This document shows, piece after piece, positions 9,603-55,635 of a DNA stretch of 64,000 bases. Source of the DNA: Octopus bimaculoides (taxonomy: Eukaryota); the NCBI RefSeq assembly GCF_001194135.2, contig NC_068983.1, forward strand, positions 149,390,828 to 149,454,827, in the 5' to 3' direction. The notes under the pieces were generated by a model that did no database searches, was not told the DNA's origin, and saw only the letters and a list, made by a program, of their open reading frames with translations. Each line of letters begins with the position of its first letter. The stretch's first letter is position 1. A program made the translations under genes and the position numbers.

Positions 9603-9921
9603 ATCATCATCATCATCATCATCGTTTAACGTGCGCTTTCCATGCTAGCATGGGTTGGACGATTTGACTGAGGACTGGTGAAACCGGATGGCTACACCAG
9701 GCTCCAATCTAATTTGGCAGATTTTCTACAGCTGGATGCCCTTCCTAACGCCAACCACTCAGAGAGTGTAGTGGGTGCTTTTACGTGTCACCCGCACGAA
9801 AACAGCCACGCTCGAAATGGTGTCTTTTATGTGCCACCCGCACAAGAGCCAGTCCAGGGGCACTGGCAACGATCTCGCTCGAAAACCCTACAAGGCCAGT
9901 CAGGCGGTACTGGCAACGGTC
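9603..9921 (-). mobile_element. Young RTE-tailed element running into an assembly gap
   Basis: (CAT)n GTTTAACGTG..CCATGCTAGCATGGG..GGATGCCCTTCCTAACGCCAACC. Confidence 0.92.
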
Positions 9922-18749: not shown

Positions 18750-19397
18750 ACCACGTGATGTGTATGGACGAGAACAGCTGTGTAAAGAGTGCCGATCTCT
18801 AACTGTGGGGGGAACCTGTGGTAGAGGTAGACTCAAGAAGACGTGGGAGGAGGTGGTGAAGCATGAATTTCAAACTTTGGACCTCACAGAGGCAATGACT
18901 AGTGACCAAGATCATTTACGAAATGCTGTGCTTCAGAAGACCAGTTTAGCCAAGTGAAATCGTAGTTGTGGCCGATGCTGGTGTCACATAACTGGTACCC
19001 ATGCTAGTAGTACATAAAGAGCACCTTTCAAGCTTTGAGCCTCACAGAGACAAGGTGGCTAATGCTGGTGGCACATGAAAAGCTCCTTTCAAATGTTGGG
19101 TCTCACAGAGGCAATGACCTAGACCTTTGGCATTATGTTGTCCTTGAGAAGAAGACCCATCAAGTCAAGTAAAATCACAGTTGTGACAGATACCATGTCA
19201 TGTAAATGGCACCCATGCCAGTGGCACGTAAAAGCACCCATTACACTCTCGGAATGGTTGGCATTAGAAAGGGCATCCAGCCGTAGAAACCATTTCAAAT
19301 GAGACTGGAGTCTGGTGCAGCCTTCCAGCTTGCCAGCCCTGGTCAAACCGTCCAACCCATGCCAGCATGGACAACGGATGCTAAATGATGATGATGA
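18750..19397 (+). mobile_element. RTE LINE 3' end (ORF2 C-terminus, 3'UTR, (GAT)n tail)
   Basis: HVMCMDENSCVKECRSLTVGGTCGRGRLKKTWEEVVK..AMTSD..RNAVL fits the RTE GRP.KTW motif; tail CCCATGCCAGCATGG..AAATGATGATG. Confidence 0.88.
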
Positions 19398-19494: not shown

Positions 19495-19875
19495 TGACTG
19501 AGACCTTTGGAAATGTGCTGTGCGTGAGAAGACCCGGCAAGCCAAGTAAGATCGTTGCCAGTGCCCCTGGACTGGTTCTTGTGCGGGTGGCACATGAGAT
19601 GCACCATTTTGAGCGTGGCCGTTGCCAGTGCCCCTGGACTGGCTTGTGCGGGTGGCACATAAAAGACACCATTTCGAGCGTGGCCGTTTTCGTGCGGGTG
19701 ACACGTAAAAGCACCCACTACACTCTCTGAGTGGTTGGCGTTAGGAAGGGCATCCAGCTGTAGAAACTCTGCCAAATTAGACTGGAGCCTGGTGTTGCCA
19801 TCCGGTTTCACCAGTCCTCAGTCAAATCGTCCAACCCATGCTAGCATGGAAGGCGGACGTTAAACGATGATGATT
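19495..19875 (+). mobile_element. Young RTE deletion derivative (ORF2 end fused to modular 3'UTR)
   Basis: 5' part matches the reverse complement of 35725-35770; three internal modules; (GAT)n tail. Confidence 0.92.
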
Positions 19876-21204: not shown

Positions 21205-23760
21205 GCTATTGGAATACATGTTTTATGTTGGGTTGAGCAGTTTGACAGGAACTAATGGGTTCAAAGACTGCTTTGTATCCCACAATCTACTTTAGCATGG
21301 TTTCTACAGTTGGATACCCTTCCTAACATCAACCACTTTACAGCATTTACTGGGTGCTTTTTTCATTCCACTAACACTAGTGAGATTGTCATGTAGCTTG
21401 CAAGACTATGAACCCAGACAGAGAAAGAGGCGGATTTATGCTAGAAGTATGAGATAAGGAGCCAGAGCAGAAATGATTTCTTGCTGTAGAGGGATTAAAT
21501 GGCTACTCACTATTTAGAAGAGAAATGGGTGATTGAAGTGGGGGTGAGAAAGAGATAAAAATAGTGATGATAAGGAGTTTGTGTTGACCCTCAAGCTATG
21601 AGGTGAGTAGAAGTGAATGGAGGTAAAAGAGCCAGGAATGTGGGTTGATAGCAAGAATGTATGGGAGTGTGAGAGATAGGGAATGAGTGAGGCAACAAAT
21701 ATAACGAATGAAGAACTAGTGTTGAGTGGATGCTGAGTTAAAGAGGCAGGGAAGAGTAGGCAACAACTTTAGAGGTTTGATATGGCTGAAGGGCGGATGT
21801 AGTGAATGGTGGGTAAGGAGTGAAGTGTGGCAGAAAAATAATGCTGATACACTGTAGACAGGGGAAAGATGAGAGATGATGAGTGGTTGGCTAAGTTGTA
21901 AGGGTGTGGGGATGAGAGAAAGAGGCAGGTATAATGCATGGAGGGAGTGAAAAACATGGTGGCAGAATAGTGAATGTAGTGGGGGGGGGAGCAATATAAA
22001 ATGTAGGTGGAGAGGACAGTATTAGGGATAAGGGATGAATATCAAGGGAAATGGTTCTGAGTAGTGAGAAGGGTTTAATGGTATTGAGGAAATGCTGCAG
22101 TTAGAGAGATAATGGGGATAAAATTGAGCAAATGGCTCACTTGTGCATATATGTACATATGCACACACACACAGCTCTTCTAGAACTTAGTTTCACTGAG
22201 TTGGACAGGTCTTCTCAAGAACTATTTATCATCAGCCATCCAAATCCTTTGCTATCTCCTCCGTGAGGTTCAAGATCCTGAGATTAGCCTTCACCAATTT
22301 GTCTCATGTCTTCTTGGGTCTCTCTCTCTCTCTCTCTCTCTTCTACAAACTCCGTCCACATTGAGATCAATACTTCTTTATATAGTTATTGTCAGCCATA
22401 TGAACCACATGTCCATACCAGTGCAGTCCTTTTCTGGCATACTACATTTGATTCCTGTTATGCCCAGTTTTTCTTTCGGCACATTTGTACTATATTGTTC
22501 ATGCACACTTACATTGTACATCCAATGGAATATACTCACTTCTTGTCTTTCCAATCTTCTCAAATCCTCTGCATTCAAGGCATATGTCACACTACAATGC
22601 AGCATTACAGTTCAAACATAAGTGTTTTACAATCTGTTCTTCACTCTGAGGGAAAAGACCTTTATTACCAGCTGTGGTAAAAGCTCCCTGAACTTATTTC
22701 AGCCTGTTCTTACCCTTGCTACTATACTTTTGGAGCAACCATCTCCCCTGTTAATTATGTCTCCTGGGTAACCAAAGTTATTGATTTCTTCTCGCATGTC
22801 ATTCAGGTATTCAAGAGAATCTATTTCCAGTGTGCTCATAATATGTATTGCTCCAGTGGATGACACATAAGTTTACTTTCTCTGTTAGCCTGTAATTCTA
22901 CTACACCTCTCATGTATCCTTAGCTTACATTGGGTACAGCTTTTGGAGTTTATACCTACTTCTTTCCTGCTTATCAAGCAAGACCATTTCCCAGAAGATA
23001 TCAAGGTCCTGTCGTCTTTCCTACTTAGTCTTTACTAAGTTTATTTGGAAACCTCTTGCATCAAGGTTTGTCTTCCATGCCTAAAATTTCCTCTCTTATT
23101 CCACTATAAATTTATCTTTGAGAGCTTAAATCATCAATATATAGGAGCTCTCGTGGCCAATCTCACTCTGTGATGGCCTGCCAGACTATGATGAATAGGA
23201 GAGGACTGAACTTTGATGAACTACCTTCTCAGTAAATTTGTCACTGAAATTGTTGCTGATTCTCACTTTACTTTCTGCATCTTTGTATACAGTTTGCACA
23301 GCCACCACAAGTTATTTGTCTATACCTAGCTTCCTCAGTGACCACCAAATTACTGAATGTGGTCCCCTGTCAAATGCCTTCGCCAAAGCAATGAAAGCCA
23401 GAAATAGTGGTTTATTCTTAACCGAGTATTTCTCCTGCAGCTGCCTCACTAGGAAGATTGCATCTATGGTACCTCTTTTGGGCATGAAGCCAAACTACAT
23501 CTCATTTAGGTCTACTCTGTCTCAGACTATGACTCTCTGTGACCATCATAATCTGATCCATTTGTTTGATTCCTTTGAGTATGCCTTCATTCCAAGTACA
23601 CTTATTGCCAATGGCATTGTGGTGCTCCTTTACACATTGTTTCACAATCCTGAACACTTCATGTTTCTGATCCTCAGATTGTTGGACATATGCAAATTTC
23701 TTCCTTCATGTGCAATTATTTTTTTCTTTTCTTTTTTTTTCTGTAAATCTCTACATAGCG
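21205..23760 (-). mobile_element. Degraded RTE LINE (RT domain about 22900-23760, C-terminus about 22200-22700, purine-rich spacer, tail about 21205-21400)
   Basis: Minus translation FGFMPKRGTIDAIFLVRQLQEKY..KNKPLFLAF..LAKAFDR.P..VIWWSLRKLG, VHQSSVLSP and RPKKT; many stops. Confidence 0.85.
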
Positions 23761-25255: not shown

Positions 25256-25568
25256 TGGAAAACACCATTCGAGCGAGGGTGTTGCCAGTGCCGCTGGACT
25301 GGCTCCTGTGCAGGTGACACGTAAAAACACCATTTGAGCATGGCCGTTGCCAGTACTGCCTGACTGGCCCTCGTGCCGGTGGCATGTAAAAGCACCCACT
25401 ACACTCTCGGAGTGGTTGACGTTAGGAAGGGCATCCAGCTGTAGAAACTCTGCCAGATCAGATTGGAGCCTGGTGCAGCCATCTGGCTCACCAGTCCCAG
25501 TCAAACCGTCAAACCCATGCCAGCATGGAAAGCAGACATTAAACGATGATGATGATGATGATGATGAT
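25256..25568 (+). mobile_element. RTE-tailed element (CCATGCCAGCATGG subfamily)
   Basis: Two internal modules, GGTTGACGTTAGGAAGGGCATCC, (GAT)n tail. Confidence 0.9.
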
Positions 25569-26718: not shown

Positions 26719-28510
26719 CCATCATCTAATGTCCGCTTTCCATGCTGGCATGGGTTAGACGGTTTAACTGGAACTAGTAAGCCAGAGAGCTGCACCAGGT
26801 TTCAATCTGATTTGGCATGGTTTCTACAACCGGATGCCCTTACTAACGCCAGCCACTATAAGAGTGTAATAGGTGCTTTTTACATGCCATTGGCATGACA
26901 CTGACAATGGCCATAACTACGATTCCACTTGGCCTGATGAGTCTTCTCAAGCACAGCATATCACCAAAGGTCTTCGTCACTTGTTATCGCCTCTGTGAGG
27001 CTCAGCATTCAAAGGTTGTGCTTCACCACCTCGCCACTGTGAGGCCCAACATTCAAAGATCATACTACAGACAACAGCCATAATTATGATTTCACGGGTG
27101 CCATTTACATGACAATGGCCAAAATTACGATTTCACAGATGCCATTTACATGACACCAGCAATGGCCATGAATACTATTTCACTTGGCTTGATGAGTCTT
27201 CTCAAGCACAGCATATTGCCAGTGGTCTTGGTCACTTGTCGCTGCCTCCATGAGGCCCAACATTCAAAGATTATGCTTCACCACCTCGTCCCATGTCTCT
27301 TTATGCAGCTGTCCTCATCCATATGTGTCACATGACCATACCAGCACATTCGTCTCTCTTGCACATCACATCTGATGCCTCTTGTGCCCAGTTTTCAAAA
27401 CACAAGACACTTACACTCTGTCACACATGCACACTGTCATGGCAATCCAGCGAAGCATTCTGGCTTCATTTCTTTCAAGCCTTTGCATGTCCTCTGTGGT
27501 CACAGCCCACATTGCACTGCCATGGAACGTGGATGCTGTGTTCGCACAGTCATCATACAGTCTGCTTTTCATTCTAAGAGAGAGGCTGTTTGTTATCAAC
27601 AGAGGTAGAATCTCTCTGAACTTTGCTCAGTCTATTCTTATTCTAGCAGCTACACTCTCAGAGCATTCACCTCCACTGCTAACTTGTTCACCTAGATAAT
27701 AGAAGCTATCAATTATTTCTAGGTATCCCCCTGGCATTTGATGGAGTCTATTTTCTGTACATTTCTAGTGTTTATTGTACCTGTACACAAAGAGTATTTT
27801 CCTTGTTAACCTTCCTCTGATATTGCTGCACCTCTTATGTGCCCATTGCTTGCACCAGATACACTTTATGGAGTTTGTACCTACACCTTTTCTACATATT
27901 GAGTAGGGCCATCTACCTGAAGGGATTTGTGATTTGTCTTATTCACTAAGACTTTAGTTTTTGCTAAATTAATTCTAAGGCCCTTTCATTCTAGCTAGAC
28001 CTTGCTTCCACACCTGAAATTTTGTCTCCAGTTCTGATGATGATTCAGTTTTAAGAACAAGGTCATCAGGATAGAGGAGCTCCCAGGCGCAGTTTGACTT
28101 AAATTCCTGTCTGAGGACTGCTCCTTGATGTACCCCTACTTGTCCCCTGAGGGGTCTGAGGACTTATCCTTAGTGTACCCCTACTTATACCCTGAATTCA
28201 TTGCTATGCTCGTTGCCAACCCTCACTTTAATGACAGCATCCCTGTACATGGCTTGTACAGCTTTCACCAACCACTCTTTTATCCCTAGTTTCCACATTG
28301 ACCACTAGATAAGAGAGCAGGGAAACCTGTCAAAGGCTTTCTCTATGTCAACAAAAGTCAAATACAGAGGTTTATTTTTGGCTAGGTACTTACTCAGACA
28401 CACCGTATCTACATTACATGTATCCCTAATTTTTTTCAAGATGGTAGAGTATAATACAAGGGAAGCTCTCTGGTATATCTTGTCAAGTCTACTTTTTGCA
28501 ATCTGTGTCA
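26719..28510 (-). mobile_element. Degraded RTE LINE, 3' portion with duplicated ORF2/UTR junction
   Basis: YLAKNKPLYLTFVDIEKAFDR and AMWAVTTEDMQRLERNEARMLRW; duplicated block at about 26895-27035 and 27150-27290; tail at 26719. Confidence 0.85.
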
Positions 28511-28980
28511 CTGAAGCAACCAATTTAAATAGATGTTTTTAGTGATAACCATTGTTTTTGTATTGTGAAGTAGGCTGTCCTGAAAGTTTGGATTTAAAAC
28601 ATGTGGTCAGATGGAGATTTGAACAGAATCAAGTTGCCAGGAGGCTGTAAATTCCCTTGCTGGATTATTTTTTATTCTTTTGCTAACATCATTTAACACT
28701 ACAAAAATAGAATGCTTGCAGTTTTGTAGAAATTTAACTGATATGATAAATTTTTGTGTAATGTTTAAAGATTTTACTCCCCTTTTCCTGCGCAAATTGT
28801 ATTGCTAGACAATCTATTGAAATATTATTTTTACCCAATGTATAAATACTATTGTTACAATATTTTCATCCATTTTAAGGATATTTGAATACAATTGGTG
28901 GAGATTTGATTGGATGAGTGATTATATAGAAGTTCATTTATAAATAAAGAGACAAAATGGACAAAATGTATGTAGGAAAA

Positions 28981-29078
28981 GGAGCCTGGTGTTGCCATCC
29001 GGTTTCACCAGTCCTCAGTCAAATCGTCCAACCCATGCTAGCATGGAAAGTGGACGTTAAACGATGATGATGATGATG
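28981..29078 (+). mobile_element. 5'-truncated young RTE tail with 7-nt TSD
   Basis: GAAAAGG at 28976-28982 and 29078-29084. Confidence 0.9.
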
Positions 29079-29704: not shown

Positions 29705-30020
29705 TCTTCATCAGCATCATTTAACATCCACTTTCCATGCTGGTATGGGTTGGATGGTTTGACTGGAACTGGTAAGCCAAGGAGCTGCACCAGCTTCAGT
29801 CTGATTTTGTATGGTTTCTATGACTGGATGCCCTCCCTAACACCAACCACTCCAAGAGTGCAATGGGTGCTTTTACGTGCTACCAGCATAACACCAGCAA
29901 TGGCCACAACTACAATTTCACTTGGTTTGACAAGTTTTCTCAGCACAGCATCACCAAAGACCTCAGTCACTTGTCCATCGCCTCCGTGAGGCCCAACATG
30001 CAAAAGATCATACTACTGCC
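29705..30020 (-). mobile_element. Older RTE 3' end
   Basis: CATTTAACATCC..CCATGCTGGTATGGG..GGATGCCCTCCCTAACACCAACC, then the ORF2 terminus. Confidence 0.8.
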
Positions 30021-30232: not shown

Positions 30233-30995
30233 TTTACATGTTTCAGTTATGTGACTGTAGCCATGCTGCAGCACTGTCTTTAGTCGAACAAATCGACCCC
30301 AGGATTTATTCTTTGTAAGCCTAGTACTTGTTCTATCAGTGTATTTTGCCGAACTGCTAAATTATGGGGATGTAAACACAGCAACATTGGTTGTCAAATG
30401 ATGGTGGGGTATGAACACAGGCACACACAAAAATATATACACATATTCACGAAATCCACTCACAAGGCTTCAGTTGGACTGTAGCTGTAGTATATCTAAT
30501 ATATATACATACATACATATATATGTGTGTGTGTGTGTATATATGTGTATGTATATGTGTTTGTGTGTGTGTATATATATGTATGTGTGTATGTATATGT
30601 GTATATGTGTGTGTGTATGTGTATATGTATGTATATATATATATATATATATATATANNNNNNNNNNNNNNNNNNNNNNNNNNNNNTATATATCTGTGTA
30701 TGTATATATATGTGTGTGTATATATGTATGTATATATATGTGTGTGTATATATGTATATATATATATGTTTGCATATATATGTGTGTGTGTGTGTATATA
30801 TATGCTCATTTACAATCATCACATGATATCCAGACAAGATACACACAGACACATATACGACAGGCTACTTTCGGTTTCCATCTAACAAATCCACTCACAA
30901 GGCTTGAGACCCTAGTAGAAGACACTTGCCCAAGGTGTTAAACAGTAGGACTGAACCCAAAACCAAGCTTCTTAACTACATAGCCATACCTGAAC
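30233..30995 (-). mobile_element. CORE-like SINE with expanded internal TA/TG compound microsatellite
   Basis: Tail at 30233-30410, microsatellite about 30495-30805, CORE-like segment and head at 30850-30995. Confidence 0.85.
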
Positions 30996-32085: not shown

Positions 32086-32356
32086 CATCATCATCATCGT
32101 TTAATGTCCGCTTTCCATGCTAGCATGGGTTGGACGATCTGACTGAGGACTGGTGAAACCAGATGGCTACACCAGGCTCCAATCTGATTTGGCAGAGTTT
32201 CTACAGCTGGATGGCCTTCCTAACGCCAACCACTCCGAGAGTGAAGTGGATGCTTTTACATGCCACTGACACGAAGGCCAGTCAAGCGCTACTGGCAACG
32301 GCCACGCTCAAAATGGTGTATTTTATGTGCCACCCACACAAGAGCCAGTCCAGAAG
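32086..32356 (-). mobile_element. Young RTE-tailed element inserted into a family D copy
   Basis: (CAT)n GTTTAATGTCCGC..CCATGCTAGCATGG; family D sequence on both sides. Confidence 0.9.
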
Positions 32357-32968
32357 CACTGTTGTTATATAGATATACAAAAGAAAAAATGTAATGCTTT
32401 TTGATCATAGATCTGCTTAGGCAGAGCCGACTTAGATTCAACAACAATAACATATCTTACTACTGGGTTTTGCAGCTGTAAAATGACATGACACTTGCTG
32501 TCGTAACTATTCCTTGATTGGAACCAATAGGGGAGCCTCTGTATGGTTGCTCTATCCTTTAGAAATAGCAGCCACATCTTCAAATCATGCCCTGCTGTAT
32601 TAAAAAAATAAGAGCACATTGGATTAATGTCCAAGATACACTACACAATAGCAGACATGATGGTTAAGGGTGAAATGCCTTCATCATAGGTATGTTTGAT
32701 GAGGGTTGACCTGAAATTGGACAACCACAGTTACTGCAGTCCAATTTATCAGTATCTGCTGTTTATGTTCATACTTTCTGATAGATTTAGTCATCCTGTG
32801 TAGCATGATATGATTTTCACCACTTAGGTTTACAGTCATATAAGTCAGTTTGTGTCTTGTATGTCTACATTTGATAAACTGTGTTTGGAATAGGTGTGAT
32901 ACTTATATTTACATTTTGGCTGCACACTGATTAGAAAGCATTTTGTTTCTAATTATTTTTAATTTTAG

Positions 32969-32999: not shown

Positions 33000-33349
33000 G
33001 TAAATATTTTCTTAGATAGCAGAAATTGCAATTTTTCTGTTAAATATTAATTGATAAGTTTTCATTAGGAACCTCCACTCAAAAAATAACTGATTCGAAA
33101 ATTGAGTCAAGTACAATTATTAGAAACCAACTCAAATCAGACTGGAACCAGCATGCCAGCTTCAGTCAAACTGTCCAACCCATGCCAGCATGTAAAATGG
33201 GCATTAAAGGATCATCATCATCAAAGAAGCTAGTGATGGAAGTTTTGCAGAGCTGTACAGAATGGCACAAGACAGACATGGATGAAAGGCCACAAAGGCT
33301 CAATTATTTTAACCCTCCATCTGGAGAGAGAGAGAGAGATTGAGAAAGA

Positions 33350-33840
33350 GGCAGAGGTGAAAATGTTCCATTCATTAGTTCTTTTATCCATCCAGCTTGT
33401 TCTGAGAATGAGTCTAAAACACCATTGTTCAAATGCTTCAATTTCCCTTTTATCAATTTTCTTTATAATCCAGCATTCAGCTCCATAGGTAGCTATTCTG
33501 AACAGTAATGAATTGAGGAGTCGCTTTTTATTTGCAAGGAGATGACTTTATTCTTTCATATGTTGTTCTGTGATATCATGATATTCTTGGCTATGTTAAG
33601 TCTTCTCTTGATTCTGTCATTGTAGTCATTAGTAATAAGAGTACCAAGATACACAAATTCTTTTATATCTTCAATATTTTCATTGTTTATTTTTATGCAG
33701 TTTTGTTCATTGTTGTGCTTTTAGCTATTTTCACTACGTTCATTTTGGGGGGAGCTTAGATGAAGTCCAACTTGAGTACTTGCATCATTTCTCTATTAAC
33801 TAAGTCCTGTAGTGTTTGCATGCTTCCAGTGTTTGCATTG
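33350..33840 (-). mobile_element. RTE (BovB-like) ORF2 fragment
   Basis: KKRLLNSLLFRIATYGAECWIIKKIDKREIEAFEQWCFRLILRTSW..TNE. Confidence 0.85.
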
Positions 33841-34669: not shown

Positions 34670-35160
34670 TCCATGTCACCATTAAACCTTTATAAACCTA
34701 TAACATTCCTTTCTCTCCATCTCCCACTCTCCTTTCACAGTCTTGTGAATTTACCCACCCACTCACCCTATCCATTCCCTGGTCCATTTCACTATATACA
34801 CCTCCCCGTAACTTGGGTGTATGCCCCATCACATATTCACCATTTTATGTCTCATTTCTTTACACACTCTCTTTCTCTCTCTCTCTCTCTCTCTTCTCTC
34901 TCCAACTGCTGTATCTCCTCTACTTATCACCTGGTAATATTACTCTCCACTAAGCTGAGGGGTCTTGTCCTGCAACTTACTTGGTAACCTGCAACTTACT
35001 TGTTGGTGCCATGTAAAAAGCACCCTGTACACTCTGTAAAGTGGTTGGCATTTGGAAGGGCATCTAGCTGTAGAAATATGCCAAAGCAGACAGCAGAACT
35101 TGATGCAGTTTTCTGACTTAGCGTGGATGGAGGACATCAAATGATGGATGATGATGAATG
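34670..35160 (+). mobile_element. Older RTE-tailed element with pyrimidine-rich 5' segment
   Basis: GTAAAAAGCACCCTGTACACTCTGTAAAGTGGTTGGCATTTGGAAGGGCATC..GATGATG. Confidence 0.7.
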
Positions 35161-35346: not shown

Positions 35347-36020
35347 AGGCGGTACTGGCAACGGCCACGCTCAAAATGGTGTATTTTATGCGCAACTTGC
35401 ACTGGAGCCAGTCCAGCGGCACTGGCAATGATCTCGCTCGAATGTCTTTACACGTGTCACCAGCACAAGTGCCAGGAAGGCAACACTGGGCACAGGTGCC
35501 ATCACAATTTCGCTTTTGCTTGCCCCAACAGGTCTTCGCAAGCTGAGTTTCGTGTCCAATGAAGGAGACGATGTGGGCATGGGTGCCAGTCAACGAATTT
35601 AGTTCGATTTCGATGTCACTTGGTTCAACAGGTCTTCACAAGCGGAGTTTAGTTTCCAATGAAGGAAGGTACGCATAAGTGGGCTGGCTACACCGCTGGC
35701 AGAGGCCTTGGATTTAGGTCTCACTTGGCTTGCCGGGTCTTCTCACACACAGCATATTTCCAAAGGTCTCGGTTAGAAGTCATGGCCTCGGTGAGGCCCA
35801 ATGTTTGAAGGTCGTACCTCACCACCTCATCCCAGGTCTTCCTGGGCCTACCTCTTCCACAGGTTCCCTCAACTGCTAGGGTGTGGCACTTTTTCACACA
35901 GCTATCCTAATCCATTCTCGCCACATGACCATACCAGCGCAATCATCTCTCTTGCACACCACAACTGATCCTTCTTAGGTCCAACTTTTCTCTCAAGGTA
36001 CTTACGCTCTGTCGAGTGTG
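35347..36020 (-). mobile_element. Young RTE LINE fragment (ORF2 C-terminus plus long 3'UTR, tail missing)
   Basis: REKLDLRRISCGVQER..LRWYGHV..GRGRPRKTWDEVVRYDLQTLGLTEAMTS; high GC and retained CpGs. Confidence 0.9.
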
Positions 36021-36430: not shown

Positions 36431-37030
36431 AACAAAAAGAACACAGCTTGGATAACGGAAAGAGTCAACAACTATTGAAATGGTTGCAAGACACAACGAA
36501 AATTTTAGAAAAATAAATAAGTAAATGAGTGGAAATTTTACCGGTGAGTGTGTTAATTCATAAGGCACTAAAAAAGAATGACTCTCCCCAAACAAATTAG
36601 AATTTAATATTTTTCATTAAAACTGTTCCAAGTTAACCTGATAATTAGTTATTGCTAGACACAAGTGCATTGCTTTAAAAGTCTTTTTAAAGCTTTCTGG
36701 TTAAGAAGTTTGCTTCTCCACTCAGGGGTTCCAAGTGTCATACAGCGCCCATTTTTTGGAATGAAATTTGGCAGATAAGTTGGTCAGGTTTTGTGTGTGT
36801 GTATTAGTGTAAAATGGTATTTCAAGTTGCGTCCCTTTGCATGCAACCGAAAATGCATGCCTCAGAACAGTAGAAATTTTTACTTTCAATTTGGAAAGAG
36901 TTATTCCCCATACATCATCTTTCAACATTTTTTTAGTAAACTTTTGCAAAAATCTTGCGATATTCAGTATTTTTATAAACTTTTCTCTCTCTCTCTCTCT
37001 CTCTCTCNNNNNNNNNNCTCTCACACACAC

Positions 37031-37089: not shown

Positions 37090-38280
37090 AAACCTCCCAA
37101 TTTTCCAATCTTTAGAAACATTGCAGCGTGTCCCACTCCCACAAAGCGTTACTCCACTGAATCTATAATCTAGCTTCCTATCGTATTTTCAACATCTCAA
37201 ACGTGATGAAAACAGCCATTAGCAGGTGGTCTTCTCCAACACCTTGAATCTCTTTAATGACCACAGCTTTTGTGAAGCCATATCTATAGGAAACCTACTC
37301 TCCTGATCTGCTCACAAGTGGGTTTCTGCCCTCAAGAAATTTGGTGCAAAATCTTATTGCCTTTGAAATCAGCAAATCTATTGAGTATGTCTGGTATGTA
37401 AATCCCCAAGTAAAACTGGCTGTATTGGATTACTGTATTGGATTACTGGCTTCGTATTAGATTGCAGCATGAGCTGATGGATCTCTTTTTAACCTACGTT
37501 CTATTAACTATGTTCTGCCACAAGATTTCAAGTTTGTCTCCATGTTTTGTATACATCAGTGACCTGCTTGTTGGTATCTTCAGCAATGCCTATTTCTAAG
37601 ATTCTACTCTTTGTTGCTCTTTAACCTTTTGCACACAAGTGTCATTCTCCTGCAATCTATTTAGATATTTCATACTGAAACTATACTGGCTCCACAAACA
37701 AAGTTTAGAAAAACATTCTCTTATAGAATATCAATCTTGTCTTTTTCAACAATACAAAGGCACAATTACTTTAAATATCAAGAAAGCATTATTGACCCGT
37801 CACCCCCACCTTAAACATGAACAACACACAACTGGAACCTTCAAGTTCATTAGAAATGCTTGGCTTCACCATCACCAAGGATCCCTCTTGGTGAGTGAAA
37901 ATACTTCAATACCACCAACTAATCCTATACAAAGCTCAGTTCATGTTGTGAGAGCCACAGTGGTGTATTGCTCAAATATCTTGGAAATGTTGCTGCTATT
38001 TACCTGTCTTACACCATGCAAAGAAAAGCCACTGATTGGTAGATACTGAGTCATTCACCAACAAACTCCAACTGCTGCTCCATGGGAAATTTTGTCTTTA
38101 ACGCCACTGCAATATTAGCTTCTTCTTAGAATTGACTGGTCTAATATCATCTCCACTCAAGCATTTCTGACTCATCTCATTCCTTTCCCACTCCTTCAGG
38201 CCATACTAACCATTACACCTAGTTCATCTTCTCCAGAACTTTGACTCTTTGGAATCCCTTCTCTACATACGCTTTTCAAC
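37090..38280 (+). mobile_element. Heavily degraded CR1/L2-group LINE RT and C-terminal remnant
   Basis: IAFEISKS..VW....KL (VALDISKAFDRVWH-like), SSLEMLGFTITKD.SW, QLILYKAQ..VR....YCSNI, RT..LWNP motifs. Confidence 0.65.
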
Positions 38281-39097
38281 TGTTAGTGTATTGCATAATT
38301 TTTTAGCTGAATTTTGTACCTTATTTCATCATTTCAAATGAGATTAAATGGTGATAATGATGATATATAACATGATACATTGTAGAAGAGTAATGTTAAC
38401 CATGTTGAGAACACACAAGAACTGTTATATTCAGTTTCATTAATTTCTGAATGATATCTTATGAAGTGTTAAAAATTTTCATCAAGCTTACAACTTGGAA
38501 CTTGGTCGCACACTCAATCCCACAGCAGTTATGTGTAAGTGTTCAAGTCACAGAAGTGTGGCACTTTTTGACATCTCACAGGATATGAGTAGAATCCATT
38601 CTACTCATCTATAATTTTGTGTGTGTATGTGTGCACAACTTTGTGTTTATGTATTTGGATGTAGATGAATGGAAAGGAAAAAAAGAATTACATTTTTTCG
38701 TGAAAGTATGCACATTTACAAGGTCGCTTAATTTGGAGTAAGGGCTTTTGTAATCTGATATTCTATCTATTTCTAAATTCTAATCTTTGTAGTGGGAGCA
38801 ACAGCTATTTTTCCAAAACCGGGAATACTAAAATAAATGATTACTTTTGAATGTCAAAATGATTGGTAGCACATGTACTTCATTGTTTGCAAAATTCTCA
38901 TAGAAACTGGTATAACCACGTGATTTCTTTGTATATATTTTCTGTAATGTGCTAGAACTTTATCTTAACAAAATCTCCAAAAAGAGGTATAGTAACCATT
39001 ACAGGTACTGTGAGTAGTCTTGGGTTTGGAGGATTGATTTTTCACTTCCCTTTCATCTACTGAACTTTGTTTTTAATTGTGTCTCTGTGTGTGTATG

Positions 39098-39138
<41 letters not shown>

Positions 39139-39264
39139 TGACACACACTATTGATATATTTAGCATATGGCTGTCATATTTCTAATCTTATTATATGTAT
39201 ATCTTGAAAATTTTATTTATTAAAACAATCATCATTAACTGACTGTCTTTTTCATCTTTTGTAG

Positions 39265-39304
39265 GTAAGTATTTTCACAAGTAATATTTCCTACAACTAC
39301 TCAG
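39265..39304 (+). other. Recursive-splice site (AG|GTAAGT) with 40-nt RS-type exon ending CAG|GTAAGA
   Basis: Branch-like TTAACTGAC at about 39235-39243, tract tgtctttttcatcttttgt, AG at 39263-39264 abutting GTAAGT; second strong donor at 39305. Confidence 0.6.
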
Positions 39305-41262
39305 GTAAGATACATGTTGTATATCTTAATATAATGATTAAATTGATCTTCAGGAAATTGTTTATTTATCTTCTTTATTTAAGTTAATAAAATATTTTAA
39401 TGATTAACTTTACATTTCAAAGGCAAAATTGAAATTTTGTGTGTGTATGTGTGTAGGTTTATGTGCATACATTTTGAAAATCCAACAAGTAAATTATAAA
39501 GGTGTTAATTTCTGTAATGTAACTTTATCTGTTATAATCAGATCTTTTTTTATTGGGGAAATTTAAAGAATAGTCAAAGATTTATATATTAATTTTATAA
39601 ACAAATTGTTATTGAATGAAATATTTTACTATAATAATATTTATTTCAGTAAATATACTATCAGTAAATCAACATACTCTTGGGGACGAAAGGTGTTACA
39701 TTGAAGATACATAAAAAGAAAGTGGTGTTCGATCTATATTCAGCCAAATTAGAAGGGAAAATACAGTAATTAAAAAAAGTAATCACAAAAATATGCATAA
39801 TCTTTTACTGGTTCCAGTCAGTGATTTGTAGCCATTGTATGGTATTATTATATGATACAATTTTAATTATTCTCTCAATTCTTAACTGTAAAAAAAATTG
39901 TCCTTTTTTTTTTCCTGTAGCAGACTTTGGAGTTCACTACTTTTAATTCAATCAATCAGATTTTAAATACTTTTTATTACTCAATTTATTTTTATTGTAC
40001 TAATTATGAAATTTTTTAAATACGTCTTTCATTTTACAAACTTTTTTATTTGTAAAAACTATCTAGCTATTATTTATTTGTTTTGAATTATAAAATGTAT
40101 TGGGCTCATTTAAGATACAGGAATACATACTTATAAGAATATATTCATGCATATTAATGTACATATAATATAATGAACTTATTGTGTACAACACTCAGGT
40201 GCACTACAACTCACCAGAAACAGTAACCAAAATTTCATGAACAGTACATAGAATATACACAGGAAGAGAACAGTGATAAAGTCTTTAAAAAAATATGTAT
40301 ATAACAATATCTACAAACCAATTGGACACATTTAACTCTTTGCTTGGTGTATCCTCAAAATTTATGCTGTAACACTCCTTTCAGCTTGGTGTATTGATAC
40401 TTTTTTTTTTTTTGTTAGTTATAAACTATATTCTTTTAGCTAGTTACATGGTTTGATAATGATAGCATAGTTTTCAAATTAAGGAAGATCTCAAAGCCTC
40501 CAATTTCCACTCTCTTACAACGCTGGGACATCTCATTCAATTATCCAAAGAGATTTTAAATGGCTATTATCTGTTTTCATTAGTCTGTTTGCATATTGCT
40601 TTTGTCTCAATGTGACATGAATAATGTTTCTGATGATGATGATTTTGTCAATGGTAGTGGTTGTTGCTGTTGTTTTGGAAGTGATGGACACAGAGATTAC
40701 TTCATACAATAAAAACCTTAGTAAATATTTCTTTAATTAGTATTCAAAATAATCATGAAAAATCGTAATTCTTTCCAATTAAAACTGCTGGCATCACTCA
40801 TCAGTGTATCGCCAGTAAAGTCAGTTGAAAATACCTAGCTCCAAATCTTTTTATGGTTCTATCTGGAGGAAAGGTCTGTGCCCATGTCTTTAGCAGGTCC
40901 TCCAAGTCTAATGCAATTGATTGTCTCTTTGATCTGTAACTAAAAGTTAATGATTTCAGAAAAAACAAGGGCAGAGAAGGAATTCTTGACAATCGATGTT
41001 CTGTAAAGTAATGATTAAACTTTGGGATTTGTGGAGGGCACAATATGGCTGATGAAAGGAGGAGGGACAAGTGAGTCAGTTTGACTTGGATAGAGATGGT
41101 ACAAGACCAGCTCGATCAAAGGAATAGAAGCCACTGAAGTAATGAAGAGTTAGAGAGTGTTGATGGGCAACTTCATACTAATCAGTTGAATGACCATACA
41201 AAGTTATATATTTTAATGAAATGTTTACCATTGAATATTTTACAATATACACAGATATATAT

Positions 41263-41418
41263 CATCATCATCATCATCATCGTTTAACGTCCGCTTTCCA
41301 TGCTAGCATGGGTTGGACGATTTGACTGAGGACTGGTGAAACCGGATGGCAACACCAGGCTCCAGTCTGATTTGGCAGAGTTTCTACAGCTGGATGCCCT
41401 TCCTAACGCCAACCACTC
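41263..41418 (-). mobile_element. Young RTE tail running into a gap
   Basis: (CAT)n GTTTAACGTCCGCTTTCCATGCTAGCATGGG. Confidence 0.92.
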
Positions 41419-42589
41419 NNNNNNNNNNNNNNNNNNNNNNNNNNNNNNNNNNNNNNNNNNNNNNNNNNNNNNNNNNNNNNNNNNNNNNNNNNATATATAT
41501 ATATATATATAATCTAAATAAGAAAACAAAGAAAGACTTTAGCACATTTTACAATTATTTCTGTACCAATTCTGCTTTCAACATCAGTTCATACAAAAGT
41601 TCTGACTGAAATTTTGCATAATATTTACAGTTTTAAACATTAGAGTGACACTTCCTCAGACCTAGGGCCTGGGAACAGACAGTGCACTTGCACCCTCTAA
41701 AATTTTGTTGGGGTGCAAAATTCAATATTGCACCCTCTACTTACCTTTCTCAGGATTAGAAAATAGTGTTTAAAAATTGATCTGTAAAAAATTAGTTGAA
41801 GTTAGGTTTCTTCTCAAAATAAGAACATTAATAAAAAGAAAATCCCACCAAATCCCTAGAAAGATATATTACTGAACTAAAGCATCTTCAACATTAAAAT
41901 TAACATTCTATATATATAACAACTGTGGCCACTCTCTCAATACTAGAACATTTGATGACCTATTAAACTTCACAATCAAGTGCCCTTCACAGTGTAGCTA
42001 TCCATTTCCTCTGAATACCATAATTGACCCATCATCATCATTGCTATCATGTTCTACTGCTACTACCCTTACCACAACTAAACAATAGCAACAACAAGAT
42101 CAGCATTGTAAGTCACTCATCAATACTGTAACAATTGATGACCTATTAAACAACACAGTCTCTAGCTCTTCTCCACACTCAGGACACTGAAATTCTTCTC
42201 AGAATAACACAAGAGATCCATCATCTCCATCATCATCCTCTTCTACTGTATCATTACCACAATTACTATTCCAATTCGTGAAGAATCACTCCTTTCTTCT
42301 CCCACTGTCCCCCTCAATCTGAGTGTATACCTGACAGCTCCATGATAAATCTGCCAACTGTAAATAAAAGAAAATTATGAACACACAAAACTCTCCAAAA
42401 TATGCTGCTATTCTTAGCATGAGAGACTATGCATACACAGTGACTGTAACTTTACCCATTTACCTGGGACAAGATGCACAATTCCTACAAGCAATACCAA
42501 CCAACGCCAAACCACACATCTTACAACACCACCGTCACCACCACCACCACCACCACCACTAAATGCTAAATCACACTTAATAGTTTCTA

Positions 42590-42769
42590 CACGTAAAAGC
42601 ACCCACTACACTCTCGGAGTGGTTGGTGTTAGGAAGGGCATCCAGCTGTAGAAACTCTGCCAAATCAGATTGGAGACTGGTGTAGCCATCTGGATCACCA
42701 GTCCTCAGTCAAATCGTCCAACCCATGCTAGCATGGAAAGGGGACGTTAAACGATGATGATGATGATGA
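42590..42769 (+). mobile_element. Young 5'-truncated RTE tail
   Basis: GGTTGGTGTTAGGAAGGGCATCC..CCATGCTAGCATGG..(GAT)n. Confidence 0.92.
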
Positions 42770-46939: not shown

Positions 46940-49525
46940 ATGATAATAAAGGAAGCTGCTAGAAATGACTAGCAAAGTAGATTCTGTTATCAGTAGGATA
47001 GATACTAAAAATATAGGAGACACTAACTTATTGATTTATGCAGGAGGAGTAATAGTCACCAGAAGATCAGATATCTCACAGGGAAAGATTAAAAAAGAGC
47101 AAATGAGGAGAAGGAGAATTCAAAATAACATGAAGTAAGACAATATCTGATTAGAATAGAAACCTGGAAGTTAGGAAACACAAGATGCAAATCTTCCTTC
47201 AAGAAAAGATACTTAGTCAAAGAGAAAGGATTTGGGACAGTAATAGAAGAGTTGAAACAGCATATCATAGCAGTAGCAGGCAAGCTCTCCAGTTATCAGA
47301 AAAGAATAGATCAGTATCAACAGAATAGATTATTTAGACCAGAGGAGATTTTATAACCAAATAAATAGTGGAGAATTAAGAACTGAAGATGAGAAACCTA
47401 ATGCAGAAGAAGCTAGGAAGTTCTGGAGTAATATTTTGGATAAGCCTGTAAACCATAATGGAGATACAGTATGGTTAAAGAAGGTGAGGGAAGGAGTAGT
47501 GAGTGAGAAGCAACCAGATCTAAGATTAACTAGTGCATTAATGAGTAAAGTGTTAGGGAAAATGTCAAATTGGAAGGGCCCAGGACCAGATTTAATCCAA
47601 GGGTACTGGCTAAAGAAATTCAGTAGTTTACATGGGAGGCTGAGGGAACAACTTCAGGATTGCCTTAATGGAGAAATAATACCAGATTGGATGACTAGAG
47701 GGAGCACAATACAAATTATGAAAGATAAGAGCAAGGGTAGTACAGCTAGCAACTAAAGACCAATCCCTTGCTTATCATTAGTGTGGAAGCTGTTGACAGG
47801 AATGCTTTGACAACCAGAATTTACTATCAGAAGAGCAGAAAGGCTGCAAGAAGAAGGCTAGAGGAACACATCATCTATTATATATAGACAAAGCAATTCT
47901 AAATGAAGTAAAAGCTAGAAAGAAAAATCTAACAACAGCATGGATAGATTATAGGAAAGCCTATGACATGATCCCACACTCATGGATAAGTGAATGTTTG
48001 AGTATATTCAGTATAGCAGACAACACAAGAGAATTAGCTGTAGCATGAAGAAATGGAAAGTAAATCTCTACTTGGGTGACACACTCTTTGGGAAAGTTAA
48101 ATCAAAAGAGGAATTTTCCAGGGGGACTCATCCCCTTTAATATTTGTCTTATGTTTGGTCCCCCTCAGTTTAGTATTAAGGAAGGCAAAGGCAGGGTATC
48201 AGTTCAGAAATAGTAAGGGAAAATTAACCATTTGCTCCACATGGATGATCTGAAGCTTTTTAGTAAGAATTAAAGAGATAGATTCCTTAATGCAGACTGG
48301 GATTTGGCATAGATAAGTGTGAAATATTAGTTATGAGAAGGGAACAAGTAGCCAACAGTGAAGGCATCCAATTACCAGATCGCCAGACATTAAAATCATT
48401 GAAAGGAGAAGAGATTTATAAGTATCTAGGAGTATTAGAATCTGACAGAGTACTAACAATGGAAATGAAAATTGAGAAGGAGTACCTCATAAGGATAAGG
48501 AAGCTAATGACGTCAAAGCTAAATGGTTCGAATCTAGTGAAGGCTGTAAATACTTGGGCAGTATCATTACTTAGATACTCAGCAGCTTTTGTAGAATGGA
48601 CAAAAACTGAATTAGCAAAGTTAGACAGAACTAGGAAGGATTTCAATATGAATGGAGGACTCCACCCAAAGGCAGGAGTAGCAAGAGTATACCTACCCAA
48701 AAAGAAAGGCCAGAAAACCAAGAACCCAAATGAAGTTAAAAACCAGAAAAAAGAACTGAAATTATCTGACAGGCAGGAGAAGGTGAGCATGGTAGATTCC
48801 CAAAGATAGTTGCAGTAAATAGTACTGAGAAAGGAAAGCTGAAGAGGGAGACAGAAAATTTATTAGTAGCTGCACAAGATCAAGCATTAAAGACTAATTG
48901 GATAAAAACCAAGATAGATTCCTAATGTAGATTATAAAGCATTACTTATATAGTAGATGAATGTAGCATGCCGGCACAGAAATAATACAAGAAAAGACAT
49001 GACAATCTAGGAAGAGCAATCCATTGGGAGCTTTGTAACATACTGATAAATGGTATGAACATGAACCTAGTAAAGTACTAGAAAGTAAGAAATACAAGAT
49101 GTTGTGGGACTTTAACATTCAGACTGACAGTAATAGAAGCTAGAAGGTCTGATTTGGTAGTAGTAGATAAAGAGAATAGAAAGTTGCAAATGACTACAGT
49201 CCCAAATGATGAAAAAATTAATATGAGAGGTATAGAAAAAAAATAGCAAAGTGCCAGGACCTAGCTATTGAATTACAGAGATTATGGAAAGTGCAGGTAA
49301 ATTGTATCCCAGTAGTTATAGGTGCACTGAGAACTATCCCTAAAGATCTGAACAGATGGATAGAGGAAATAGGCATAAAACCCAGTCTAGTACAGCTCCA
49401 GAAAACAGTGTTATTAGGGACAGTTAGAATACTTAGGGAGTTTCTTGACATCTAAGGTTACTTGCTGTAGCCCAATGTTAGGATTCTTTTCTTTTCCAAC
49501 AACCTAATCTGTTGAGTGTATATGA
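46940..49525 (+). mobile_element. R4/Dong-clade non-LTR retrotransposon (RT plus restriction-like endonuclease), 5'-truncated and pseudogenised
   Basis: NWKGPGPDLIQGYWLKKF, WIDYRKAYDMIPHSW, FQGDS.SPL, HMDDLKLF, KYLGVLE, AVNTWAVSLLRYSA, LWDFNIQTD..ARRSDLVVVDK, IPVVIGAL.TIPK, LQKTVLLGT; flanked by AAT-rich tracts. Confidence 0.92.
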
Positions 49526-53449: not shown

Positions 53450-54440
53450 CTTTCAGGTCCACCCAGATTGATGAAATTGACAACTAATGTTAGCCAATAT
53501 TCTTGACATCATCATTTTACATTTGCTTTCCATTTTGGTATGGATCCGATGGGTTGTCATAACAGCTTTCTTCTTCAGTACTGCATGTTGCTGATTATCT
53601 TGGTCTTTTGTCATTCTCTTTGCAAGGTATAACCTCCTGAGATCCATCTTCACCACTTCATCCCGTGTTTTCCTAGGTCTTCCAGATCTACAGATCCCAT
53701 CAACTTTGAAAATCCTGCACTTATTTATACAGCTGCCATCCTCTATATGCATCAAATGCCCATACCAGTGCAATCTTTACTCTCATACTCTACATCTGGT
53801 TTATCTTATACTTAATTTTTTTACAGCTCATTTATTTTGATTTATGTACACTAACATTACATATCCAATGGAACATTTCTCACTCTATGTCTTTTTAGTC
53901 TTCACAAATTCTCTGCATTCAGGGCTTATATCTCACTCCCATACAGCATTGCAATTCATGCATAAACATCATTCAATCTGCCTTTCACTCTGAGAGAAAA
54001 TCCTTTGCAGCCAGCTGTAGTTACAGCTTCCTGAACTTTTTCCAATCCTGGTTACTCTACTTTCTGGACACTCACCTCCATTGCTAATTCTGTCATCTAC
54101 ATAAGCTTTTAGGGAATCATTTGGGCAGTTGAGAAAATCTGTTTCCTGTGTACTTTAGTACTTACTGTCCTCTGTGCATCTGCTGCATGCAAAAACTTAC
54201 TTTCCTTGTTAGCCTGCTTATGATTTTACATTTTGTACCACTCTGTTTTACATTGGGAACATTATATGCAATTTCAACCTACTCTTTATGTATGTGCTTA
54301 GTGATCATGGCCATTTCCCTGGTGGTATCAAAATCCTATCTTCTTTCCTACATCCTATCCTTTAGTATTTGCTAAGTTTACTTTGGAGGTCTCTCAATTT
54401 AAGGTCTAATTACCCTGTAAAAATTTTTTGGATGCTGCAT
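53450..54440 (-). mobile_element. Degraded RTE ORF2 C-terminal fragment
   Basis: HWYGHLMHIED....KC..F.VDG....GRPRKT.DEVVK.DL. Confidence 0.85.
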
Positions 54441-55261: not shown

Positions 55262-55635
55262 TTTTATTGAAATCGTCCAACCCATGCTAGCATGGAAGGC
55301 GGACATTAAACGATGATGATGATGATGATGATGATACATTTACTTAAAACAATTATAAAAACAATAAAGACAGTAAGAAAGGGAAAAAAATGTTCATACA
55401 TTCATTTCACATTAATGAAAGTGGTTTATTTTTCTCTAATGTTGAAATATATGCATGCATACATATACACACATACATACGTTCTCAGAGTGGTTGGCAT
55501 TAGGAAGTGCATCCAGCCATAGAAACCTTGCCAAATCAGATTGGAATCTGGTGCAGCCCCCTGGCTTATCAGTTTTCAGTTAATCCGTCTAACCCATGCC
55601 AGCATGGAAAGCAGACGTTAAACGGTGATGATGAT
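55262..55635 (+). mobile_element. Two 5'-truncated RTE tails (55262-55335 and 55480-55635)
   Basis: CCAACCCATGCTAGCATGG..(GAT)n; GGTTGGCATTAGGAAG..CCCATGCCAGCATGG. Confidence 0.85.

What the first reader, a model, noticed from the sequence alone, without database searches (positions are those of the whole stretch)
39230..39310. Recursive-splicing 'ratchet point' with an RS-exon, deep in a long intron
Seen: branch-like TTAACTGAC, a long pyrimidine tract, then TAG|GTAAGT (acceptor fused to a perfect donor), and 40 nt later a second strong donor CAG|GTAAGA. It is the only such acceptor-donor fusion with a proper tract that I found on the + strand. Established: Drosophila ratchet points and vertebrate RS-exons in long neural genes have this architecture, with the reconstituted donor competing with the downstream donor and the outcome depending on the upstream exon or promoter. 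Inference: a cephalopod gene with multiple first exons may use recursive splicing as an inclusion switch. Only frame 0 is open (VSIFTSNISYNYS), and 40 nt would shift the frame.
Basis: partly seen in the sequence, partly recalled or inferred. Interest (0 to 1): 0.75.

Follow-up and report, generated by a model that had tools for sequence, protein, structure and literature searches.

The report
Candidate recursive splice site, untested
The described splice acceptor fused to a perfect splice donor, with a second donor 40 bases later, is really there and is rarer than chance predicts, but with no gene, transcript or related genome to compare it remains a sequence-only candidate for stepwise ("recursive") intron removal.

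Summary
On the + strand there is a branch-point-like CTGAC (A at 39242), a pyrimidine tract (39244-39261), TAG|GTAAGT (junction 39264|39265), a 40-nt segment and CAG|GTAAGA (donor at 39305). It is the only such fusion on either strand of the window.

An acceptor and donor pair this strong is not unusual: 29-40% of simulated strands contain one. The direct fusion to GTAAGT is unusual, at about 0.03-0.07 expected per window. Adding the second donor and the branch motif brings the expectation to about 1e-4 to 3e-3, with thresholds chosen after the fact.

Every sequence-level criterion of a fly or vertebrate recursive splice site with a cryptic RS-exon is met. Everything that would make it real could not be tested:
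- No exon of any gene was found on either strand in 64 kb.
- The organism was not identified, so "cephalopod" and "multiple first exons" are unsupported.
- Strand evidence is weak (T>A skew only).
- No RNA data or orthologous sequence was available.

My estimates are about 0.4 for a used recursive-type site, about 0.4 for a chance pseudo-exon and about 0.15 for an ordinary expressed or poison micro-exon. If real, it is a new member of a known kind. Interest is modest.

The parts
39235..39243 (+). Branch-point-like TTAACTGAC. CTGAC has its branch A at 39242, 22 nt upstream of the acceptor G; the overlapping TTAAC has its A at 39238, 26 nt upstream.
   Evidence: A CTRAY motif at 18-40 nt occurs in only 12% of equally strong decoy acceptors.
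39244..39261 (+). Polypyrimidine tract TGTCTTTTTCATCTTTTG (15 of 18 pyrimidines), with no AG between branch motif and acceptor.
   Evidence: Acceptor score is 11.3 bits; 10 AGs on + and 6 on - score as high or higher.
39262..39264 (+). Acceptor TAG. The junction lies at 39264|39265.
39265..39270 (+). GTAAGT, the donor half-site fused to the acceptor (putative ratchet-point donor, completed by the end of whichever exon is spliced onto 39265).
   Evidence: The +1..+6 partial score is 8.7 bits against 7.2 for the downstream GTAAGA.
39265..39304 (+). 40-nt putative cryptic RS-exon. Its length is not a multiple of 3, and there are stop codons in two of three frames.
   Evidence: There is no second copy in the window, and no protein match for its read-through peptide.
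39302..39310 (+). CAG|GTAAGA, the second strong donor that would define the RS-exon.
   Evidence: It scores 11.4 bits, sixth best of 3534 GT on the + strand.
39259..39296 (+). Predicted local hairpin (39259-39273 pairs with 39283-39296) that buries the acceptor AG and the GTAAGT. Relevance is uncertain.
   Evidence: Free energy is -11.7 kcal/mol for the 58-nt piece (39255-39312) folded on its own, z = -2.5 against mononucleotide shuffles.
39078..39147 (+). UG-rich stretch followed by a (CA)n microsatellite, starting about 120 nt upstream of the acceptor. It is predicted to pair with the (UG)n tract at 39438-39465.
   Evidence: The long-range helix has 23 bp (39118-39147 with 39438-39465); the 421-nt fold has z = -2.55.
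39436..39465 (+). (TG)n-like tract about 130 nt downstream of the second donor, the complementary partner of the upstream (CA)n.

Best explanation
If the + strand is transcribed here as part of a long intron, the element most likely acts as a recursive splice site of the fly/vertebrate type. Inferred steps: (1) The spliceosome recognises 39265-39304 by exon definition, using the branch A at 39242, the pyrimidine tract and the TAG acceptor on one side and the CAG|GTAAGA donor at 39305 on the other. (2) The upstream exon is ligated to 39265, removing the first part of the intron as its own lariat. (3) That ligation places an exon end (typically xAG) in front of GTAAGT and so creates a full-consensus donor at the new junction. 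(4) This regenerated donor competes with the donor at 39305. If it wins, the 40-nt segment leaves with the rest of the intron and no trace remains in the mRNA. If it loses, the 40 nt stay in and shift the frame or introduce a stop codon. Only the presence, strength and spacing of the signals are shown here. Every step of use is inferred.
For: All signals are present at optimal spacing. This is the only acceptor-donor fusion in 128 kb of strand sequence. The fusion is expected 0.03-0.07 times per window by decoys and simulation. With the second donor (about 0.02-0.035) and the branch motif (0.12) the joint expectation is about 1e-4 to 3e-3. The architecture matches the published definition: tandem acceptor|donor, cryptic RS-exon of about 50 nt, exon content generally out of frame, and a ratchet donor usually stronger than the RS-exon donor (PMC8605326). 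Most fly sites have a further donor less than 100 nt downstream (PMC6224609), and recursive acceptors are very strong (PMC6110457). Here the exon is 40 nt and out of frame, with stops in 2 of 3 frames, and GTAAGT scores 8.7 against 7.2 bits for GTAAGA over +1..+6. The segment is unique sequence, not one of the window's repeats. No coding exon was detected within 64 kb, which is compatible with a very long intron. T>A skew on the + strand in 13 of 16 bins is weakly consistent with + being a sense strand.
Against: There is no evidence that the + strand, or either strand, is transcribed. An exon-free 64 kb fits intergenic DNA equally well. An acceptor+donor pair this strong arises in 29-40% of simulated strands. 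The thresholds are post hoc, and a genome of gigabase size would hold tens to about a hundred chance copies of the full constellation and one to a few thousand of the bare fusion. GC skew is opposite to the vertebrate sense-strand pattern, and SINE copies show no orientation bias (7 against 7). The acceptor is good but not outstanding: 16 AGs in the window score as high or higher. The second donor is nearly as strong as the ratchet donor, so efficient skipping is not assured. Recursive splicing has not been reported outside insects and vertebrates in the literature searched. Conservation was untestable.
Confidence: 0.4

Rival explanations
1. It is a chance pseudo-exon: a fortuitous constellation of splice-site-like motifs in AT-rich, T-rich non-coding DNA (intergenic, or intronic on the wrong strand) that is never or only negligibly used.
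For: No gene, exon or transcript evidence was found in 64 kb. The window holds 206 acceptor+donor pairs at moderate thresholds, and pairs as strong as this one appear in 29-40% of simulated strands. The bare fusion is expected in 3-7% of windows, so a reader scanning many windows will meet such sites. Stops and a length that is not a multiple of 3 are what random AT-rich sequence gives. The strand-bias evidence is contradictory.
Against: The joint occurrence of the branch consensus at -22, an AG-free tract, a perfect GTAAGT fused to the AG and a near-perfect donor at +40 has an expectation of only about 1e-4 to 3e-3 per window. It is the single best site on both strands and lies in unique sequence.
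Confidence: 0.4
2. It is a genuine expressed 40-nt exon (an alternative, poison or UTR micro-exon, or an exon of a non-coding RNA). Its GTAAGT start is either incidental or makes it an 'annotated RS-exon' whose recursive donor is normally repressed, for example by the exon junction complex.
For: The acceptor and donor are strong and at micro-exon spacing. [quoted passage not shown] Ubx m1/m2 are 51-nt expressed RS-exons (PMC8605326). One frame is open.
Against: 40 nt is not frame-preserving, and two frames carry stops. No protein in the 5.8-billion-sequence database matched the read-through peptide or neighbouring ORFs, although 13 residues are too few to be detected. No other exon of such a gene was found in the window. 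A full GTAAGT at an exon start is rare by my own estimate (below 1e-3 of exons).
Confidence: 0.15
3. It is a U1-binding decoy or cryptic terminal-exon module. Two strong U1 sites just upstream of an AATAAA (about 39388) would suppress use of the acceptor plus poly(A) signal as a premature last exon. Alternatively, the flanking UG/CA repeats would mark a repressed cryptic exon.
For: There are two donors of at least 10 bits within 40 nt, an AATAAA about 85 nt downstream, and UG-rich tracts on both sides with predicted pairing of the CA and UG repeats.
Against: AATAAA/ATTAAA occur about every 500 nt on this strand, and (CA)n repeats are common in the window, so both are expected by chance. No transcript evidence exists.
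Confidence: 0.05

Closest known systems
Drosophila intronic ratchet points with cryptic RS-exons (Ubx, kuz, Bx; Hatton 1998, Burnette 2005, Duff 2015, Joseph 2018/2021; PMC8605326, PMC6110457)
   Same: It shares a tandem acceptor|donor around AG|GT with a strong tract and a GTAAGT donor. It also has a short (about 50 nt, here 40 nt) out-of-frame cryptic exon bounded by a second donor less than 100 nt downstream, and a ratchet donor at least as strong as the exon donor over +1..+6.
   Different: Fly sites are defined by saw-tooth RNA coverage, junction reads and ultraconservation inside introns that are mostly longer than 40 kb. None of these is known here. The fly consensus acceptor is usually a longer uninterrupted T-run ending in CAG, whereas here the tract is interrupted and ends in TAG. 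The organism is not an insect as far as can be told, and it is unidentified.
Vertebrate recursive splicing with RS-exons in long neural genes (CADM1/2, ANK3, NTM and others; Sibley 2015, as summarised in PMC6224609)
   Same: It shows the same RS-exon definition, in which an exon starts with a partial donor motif, and the same competition between the reconstituted donor and the RS-exon donor. Inclusion would be deleterious through a frameshift or stop.
   Different: Vertebrate cases lie in introns longer than 100 kb of identified genes, and inclusion depends on the identity of the upstream exon. Here neither the gene nor any upstream exon is known, so the proposed promoter-dependent switch is pure speculation.
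Intronic pseudo-exons (decoy splice-site pairs)
   Same: It is a short segment flanked by good acceptor and donor motifs in repeat-rich non-coding DNA with no coding potential. Such pairs are abundant in the window (206).
   Different: Ordinary pseudo-exons do not begin with a perfect GTAAGT fused to the acceptor. That feature is expected only 0.03-0.07 times per window.

Membership tests
Intronic recursive splice site (ratchet point) with cryptic RS-exon | [quoted passage not shown] | tested here: met
   TAG|GTAAGT lies at 39262-39270. The tract has 15 of 18 pyrimidines, CTGAC has its A at -22, and no AG intervenes. The acceptor scores 11.3 bits, in the top 0.3% of AGs on the strand.
Intronic recursive splice site (ratchet point) with cryptic RS-exon | A further donor less than 100 nt downstream that defines a short cryptic exon (about 50 nt) | tested here: met
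   CAG|GTAAGA lies at +40 nt and scores 11.4 bits. The criterion is taken from PMC8605326 and PMC6224609.
Intronic recursive splice site (ratchet point) with cryptic RS-exon | The ratchet-point donor is stronger than the RS-exon donor, so that the exon is skipped | tested here: inconclusive
   Over +1..+6, GTAAGT scores 8.7 bits against 7.2 for GTAAGA. Positions -3..-1 of the ratchet donor come from the unknown upstream exon, and the margin is small.
Intronic recursive splice site (ratchet point) with cryptic RS-exon | Exon content is non-coding: out of frame or carrying stop codons | tested here: met
   The exon is 40 nt, with TAA stops in frames 1 and 2. This discriminates weakly, because random AT-rich sequence behaves the same way.
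Intronic recursive splice site (ratchet point) with cryptic RS-exon | Lies inside a long intron of a gene transcribed on the same strand | tested here: inconclusive
   No exon was found on either strand. Pfam scans of 438 stop-free segments gave only transposon-type or weak hits. Eighty-four splice-flanked candidate exon peptides had no near-exact database match. Strand skews are contradictory.
Intronic recursive splice site (ratchet point) with cryptic RS-exon | Strong evolutionary conservation of the AG|GTAAGT core (and of the downstream donor) against poorly conserved flanks | not testable with these tools
   No eukaryotic genome collection is available. Exact-match scans of metagenome and prokaryotic genome contigs found nothing, and no ORF near the site has a database relative.
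Intronic recursive splice site (ratchet point) with cryptic RS-exon | RNA evidence: saw-tooth intronic coverage, junction reads from the upstream exon to the site, and segment lariats | not testable with these tools
   No RNA-seq data are accessible.
Expressed cassette micro-exon / annotated RS-exon | Frame-preserving length or coding continuity with the flanking exons | tested here: not met
   40 nt is not a multiple of 3, only one frame is open, and no flanking exons were found.
Expressed cassette micro-exon / annotated RS-exon | Presence in mature mRNA | not testable with these tools
   There are no transcript data, and the 13-residue peptide is too short for the protein searches.

The most novel reading that the evidence does not exclude
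The site is a working recursive splice site in a non-insect, non-vertebrate animal (putatively a cephalopod). Its 40-nt RS-exon would act as a poison-exon switch whose inclusion depends on which upstream exon or promoter is used. The local hairpin over AG|GTAAGT and the pairing of the flanking (CA)n and (UG)n repeats would tune the choice between the two donors.
Probability: 0.08. Interest if true: 0.55.

Novelty: new member of a known kind. Interest (0 to 1): 0.3.

Why it matters
Recursive splicing is documented in insects and vertebrates. The literature searched here holds no report from molluscs or other lophotrochozoans. A validated site would suggest that stepwise removal of very long introns through cryptic RS-exons is widespread among bilaterians rather than confined to insects and vertebrates. 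That would be relevant to animals whose neural genes carry very large introns. As it stands, this is one motif-level candidate without a host gene. Its practical value is as a precise, cheap target for a junction-read and conservation check once the window is placed in its genome.

Tried and rejected
1. Host-gene search by Pfam on all 438 stop-free segments of at least 45 aa on both strands. This gave only RVT_1, a DUF4817 helix-turn-helix, C1_1/PHD-like zinc-finger hits and noise. No cadherin or other host-gene domain appeared, so nothing supports 'multiple first exons'.

2. Protein database search with ORFs within about 700 nt of the site and with 84 splice-flanked, non-repeat candidate exons. 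Neither gave a hit. The concatenated queries probably recover only near-exact matches, so these negatives are weak.

3. Organism identification through the LINE reverse transcriptase and one encoding contig. The best relatives are 45-58% identical, mostly unnamed ENA contigs, and the organism remains unidentified.

4. The 149-aa ORF 37600-38046 upstream on the same strand. It has no homolog among 1.84 billion representatives. By eye it overlaps a degenerate LINE tail.

5. A U1 snRNA pseudogene on the - strand, considered because ATACTTACCT is the complement of the donor. It was rejected: there are no Rfam hits in the window.

6. Repeat membership of the site. No second copy exists in the window apart from the (CA)n repeat.

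7. Strand inference from SINE orientation (7 against 7) and from counts of 5'ss-like and poly(A)-signal motifs. These were uninformative beyond the T>A compositional skew.

8. Exact-match scans for host-derived copies in metagenome and prokaryotic genome contigs. Nothing was found.

9. tRNA-derived SINE heads by ARAGORN. None were found.

Full report
**Observation**

The + strand reads ...CATCATTAACTGACTGTCTTTTTCATCTTTTGTAG|GTAAGTATTTTCACAAGTAATATTTCCTACAACTACTCAG|GTAAGATAC.... The elements sit as follows:

| Element | Coordinates |
|---|---|
| TTAACTGAC | 39235-39243 |
| Branch A of CTGAC | 39242, 22 nt before the acceptor G |
| Pyrimidine tract | 39244-39261 |
| TAG acceptor | 39262-39264 |
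| GTAAGT | 39265-39270 |
| CAG\|GTAAGA | 39302-39310 |

The second donor begins exactly 40 nt after the first. No AG lies between the branch motif and the acceptor. Only frame 0 of the 40-mer is open (VSIFTSNISYNYS), and frames 1 and 2 hit TAA. That includes uniqueness: AGGTAAGT occurs once on each strand, and the - strand copy (41746) has no pyrimidine tract. Under relaxed criteria the site is still the only one on the + strand, with one weak analogue on the - strand at 4170.

**Is it more than chance?**

I scored splice sites with generic metazoan weight matrices written from memory, so the bit values are approximate.

- The acceptor scores 11.3 bits. Ten AGs on + and six on - do as well or better.
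- The two donors score 10.4 and 11.4 bits. Twelve GT on + and seventeen on - reach 10.
- The pair 39265/39305 is the best acceptor+donor pair of 206 in the window. This is not remarkable, because 29-40% of Markov-simulated 64-kb strands contain a pair at least as strong.

What is unusual is the direct fusion to GTAAGT.

- Simulations give 0.012-0.035 such sites per strand.
- Counting the 90 permutations of GTAAGT behind the real strong acceptors of both strands gives 0.033-0.067 per hexamer.
- A donor of at least 10 bits within 20-150 nt adds a factor of about 0.02-0.035. This factor is my own arithmetic from the donor counts (12 and 17 sites of at least 10 bits on the two strands, times 131 positions, divided by 64,000). 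One search simulated the joint event directly and gave about 0.0025 per strand.
- A CTRAY branch motif at 18-40 nt adds a factor of 0.12.

The joint expectation is roughly 1e-4 to 3e-3 per window. All cut-offs were chosen after seeing the site. A gigabase-scale genome would still hold tens to about a hundred chance copies of the whole constellation and one to a few thousand bare fusions.

**Surroundings**

The window is AT-rich (GC about 0.34). It has six N gaps, so it comes from a draft assembly, and it is dense in repeats.

- A SINE-like family has 14 further copies or fragments, seven in each orientation relative to the reference copy at 6170-6518.
- A frameshifted LINE reverse transcriptase lies at about 47120-49070 on +.
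- Several further stop-free segments on the - strand look by eye like reverse-transcriptase fragments.

The site itself lies in unique sequence, and no other copy exists in the window. It sits between a (CA)n microsatellite (39096-39147) and a (TG)n tract (39436-39465).

I looked for a host gene in four ways.

- Pfam on all 438 stop-free segments of at least 45 aa on both strands gave only transposon-type or marginal hits.
- ORFs within 700 nt of the site had no relatives.
- Eighty-four splice-flanked, non-repeat candidate exon peptides had no match. This search probably only detects near-identical proteins.
- The longest nearby + strand ORF (37600-38046) has no homolog among 1.84 billion representatives.

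Rfam and ARAGORN found nothing. The window therefore contains no recognisable exon. It is either part of a very long intron or intergenic. Nothing supports 'multiple first exons'.

The organism could not be identified. The LINE's best relatives are 45-58% identical, mostly unnamed ENA contigs, and the named ones are from a shrimp, a coral and a jellyfish.

**Strand**

The + strand has T>A in 13 of 16 4-kb bins. (T-A)/(T+A) is +0.04 to +0.05 in non-repeat sequence. There are four times more T8 than A8 runs and fewer AATAAA (72 against 113). From my own knowledge, vertebrate sense-strand introns show T>A together with G>C. Here G<C, and SINE orientation is balanced. This is at most weak support for + being a sense strand.

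**Comparison with known recursive sites**

Joseph et al. (PMC8605326) define fly ratchet points as:

- tandem acceptor|donor pairs in long introns;
- carrying a short cryptic RS-exon (about 50 nt) with a downstream donor;
- with a ratchet donor usually stronger than the RS-exon donor;
- and with ultraconserved core motifs.

Blazquez et al. (PMC6224609) note that most fly sites have a further donor less than 100 nt downstream. They also count 197 efficient intronic sites in flies against 10 in humans. Pai et al. (PMC6110457) find the sites in most fly introns longer than 40 kb, with very strong acceptors.

The present site meets every criterion that sequence alone can test: the fusion, a strong acceptor with branch point, a 40-nt out-of-frame exon and a donor at +40. 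GTAAGT is slightly stronger than GTAAGA over +1..+6 (8.7 against 7.2 bits). The criteria that actually establish recursive splicing were untestable: a long same-strand intron, conservation, saw-tooth coverage, junction reads and lariats.

**Weighing**

The chance density of the full constellation is about 1e-3 per window. A real-site density would range from about 1e-3 per window (human-like) to more than 0.1 (fly-like), averaged over genome and strand. Comparing the two gives a posterior near one half that the spliceosome uses this element.

I split this as about 0.4 for a cryptic recursive site and about 0.15 for an expressed or poison micro-exon. About 0.4 remains for a chance pseudo-exon and 0.05 for other readings.

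**Side observations**

- RNA folding predicts that the (CA)n and (UG)n tracts pair over 23 bp and loop out about 290 nt containing the element (z = -2.55).
- A 14-bp local hairpin (39259-39273 with 39283-39296) is predicted to bury the acceptor AG and the GTAAGT (-11.7 kcal/mol, z = -2.5).

Both predictions are modestly better than shuffles and could be coincidental, given how common these microsatellites are in the window.

**Verdict**

If true, this is a new member of a known kind in a lineage where it has not been described. Interest is modest until the window is placed in its genome and RNA data are examined.

Noticed in passing
window 39096-39147 and 39436-39465 (+): A (CA)n microsatellite upstream and a (TG)n tract downstream flank the putative exon at about 120-130 nt on each side. 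They are predicted to pair over 23 bp and loop out about 290 nt (fold z = -2.55). UG-rich tracts on both sides recall repressed cryptic exons, but these repeats are common in the window.
   Followed up: partly
window 39259-39296 (+): A predicted 14-bp hairpin encloses the acceptor AG and the GTAAGT donor half-site (-11.7 kcal/mol, z = -2.5 against mononucleotide shuffles). It could modulate donor choice or be coincidental.
   Followed up: partly
window 6170-6518, 9613-9892, 19221-19397, 19550-19873, 25268-25555, 26727-26880, 28981-29073, 29717-29888, 32088-32359, 35005-35090, 35347-35442, 41271-41418, 42589-42763, 55483-55624: This is a SINE-like repeat family: a reference copy at 6170-6518 plus 14 further copies or fragments at 73-95% identity to it. 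Seven lie in each orientation relative to the reference, and the copies at 41271 and 42589 are 94-95% identical to it. No tRNA-like head was detected by ARAGORN or Rfam.
   Followed up: partly
window about 47120-49070 (+): A degenerate LINE reverse-transcriptase ORF is broken into at least three frames. Its best database relatives are only 45-58% identical, mostly unnamed ENA contigs, and the named ones come from Penaeus, Acropora and Rhopilema. It did not identify the source organism.
   Followed up: yes
window 23315-23494 (-), 27414-28538 (-), 33233-33547 (-), 35724-35906 (-), 53456-53776 (-), 18748-18954 (+), 37850-37895 (+): These are further reverse-transcriptase or LINE-tail-like fragments, recognised by eye from translations. 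One zinc-finger-like segment (probably 27768-27938, -) gives weak C1_1/PHD Pfam hits. They were not confirmed individually.
   Followed up: no
window 1-64000: There is a strand asymmetry: T>A on the + strand in 13 of 16 4-kb bins, T8 runs 117 against A8 runs 30, and AATAAA 72 on + against 113 on -. G is slightly below C. The exception is 40-52 kb, which holds the + oriented LINE.
   Followed up: partly
window 50273 (-) and 4170 (-): Two weaker acceptor-donor fusions lie on the - strand. One is TTACAAG|GTGAGT, with an AG 8 nt upstream of the acceptor. The other is TTTCAG|GTGGGG, with a donor 159 nt downstream. Neither meets the criteria used for the main site.
   Followed up: partly
window 9922-10564, 12303-12594, 30658-30686, 37008-37017, 41419-41492, 57326-57372: Six runs of N (10-643 bases) show that the window comes from a gapped draft scaffold. 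The site lies in an uninterrupted 4.4-kb stretch between two gaps.
   Followed up: no
window 37600-38046 (+): A 149-codon stop-free stretch lies 1.2 kb upstream of the site on the same strand. It has no homolog in 1.84 billion representative proteins. In another frame it overlaps an 'LGFTITKDPSW'-type LINE tail motif, so it is probably transposon debris.
   Followed up: yes
window 1-23035, one member of alignment A2 (probably 13142-13384, +): There is a weak DUF4817 helix-turn-helix hit (E = 1.5e-4), which suggests a DNA-transposon remnant. The member that matched was not pinned down.
   Followed up: no
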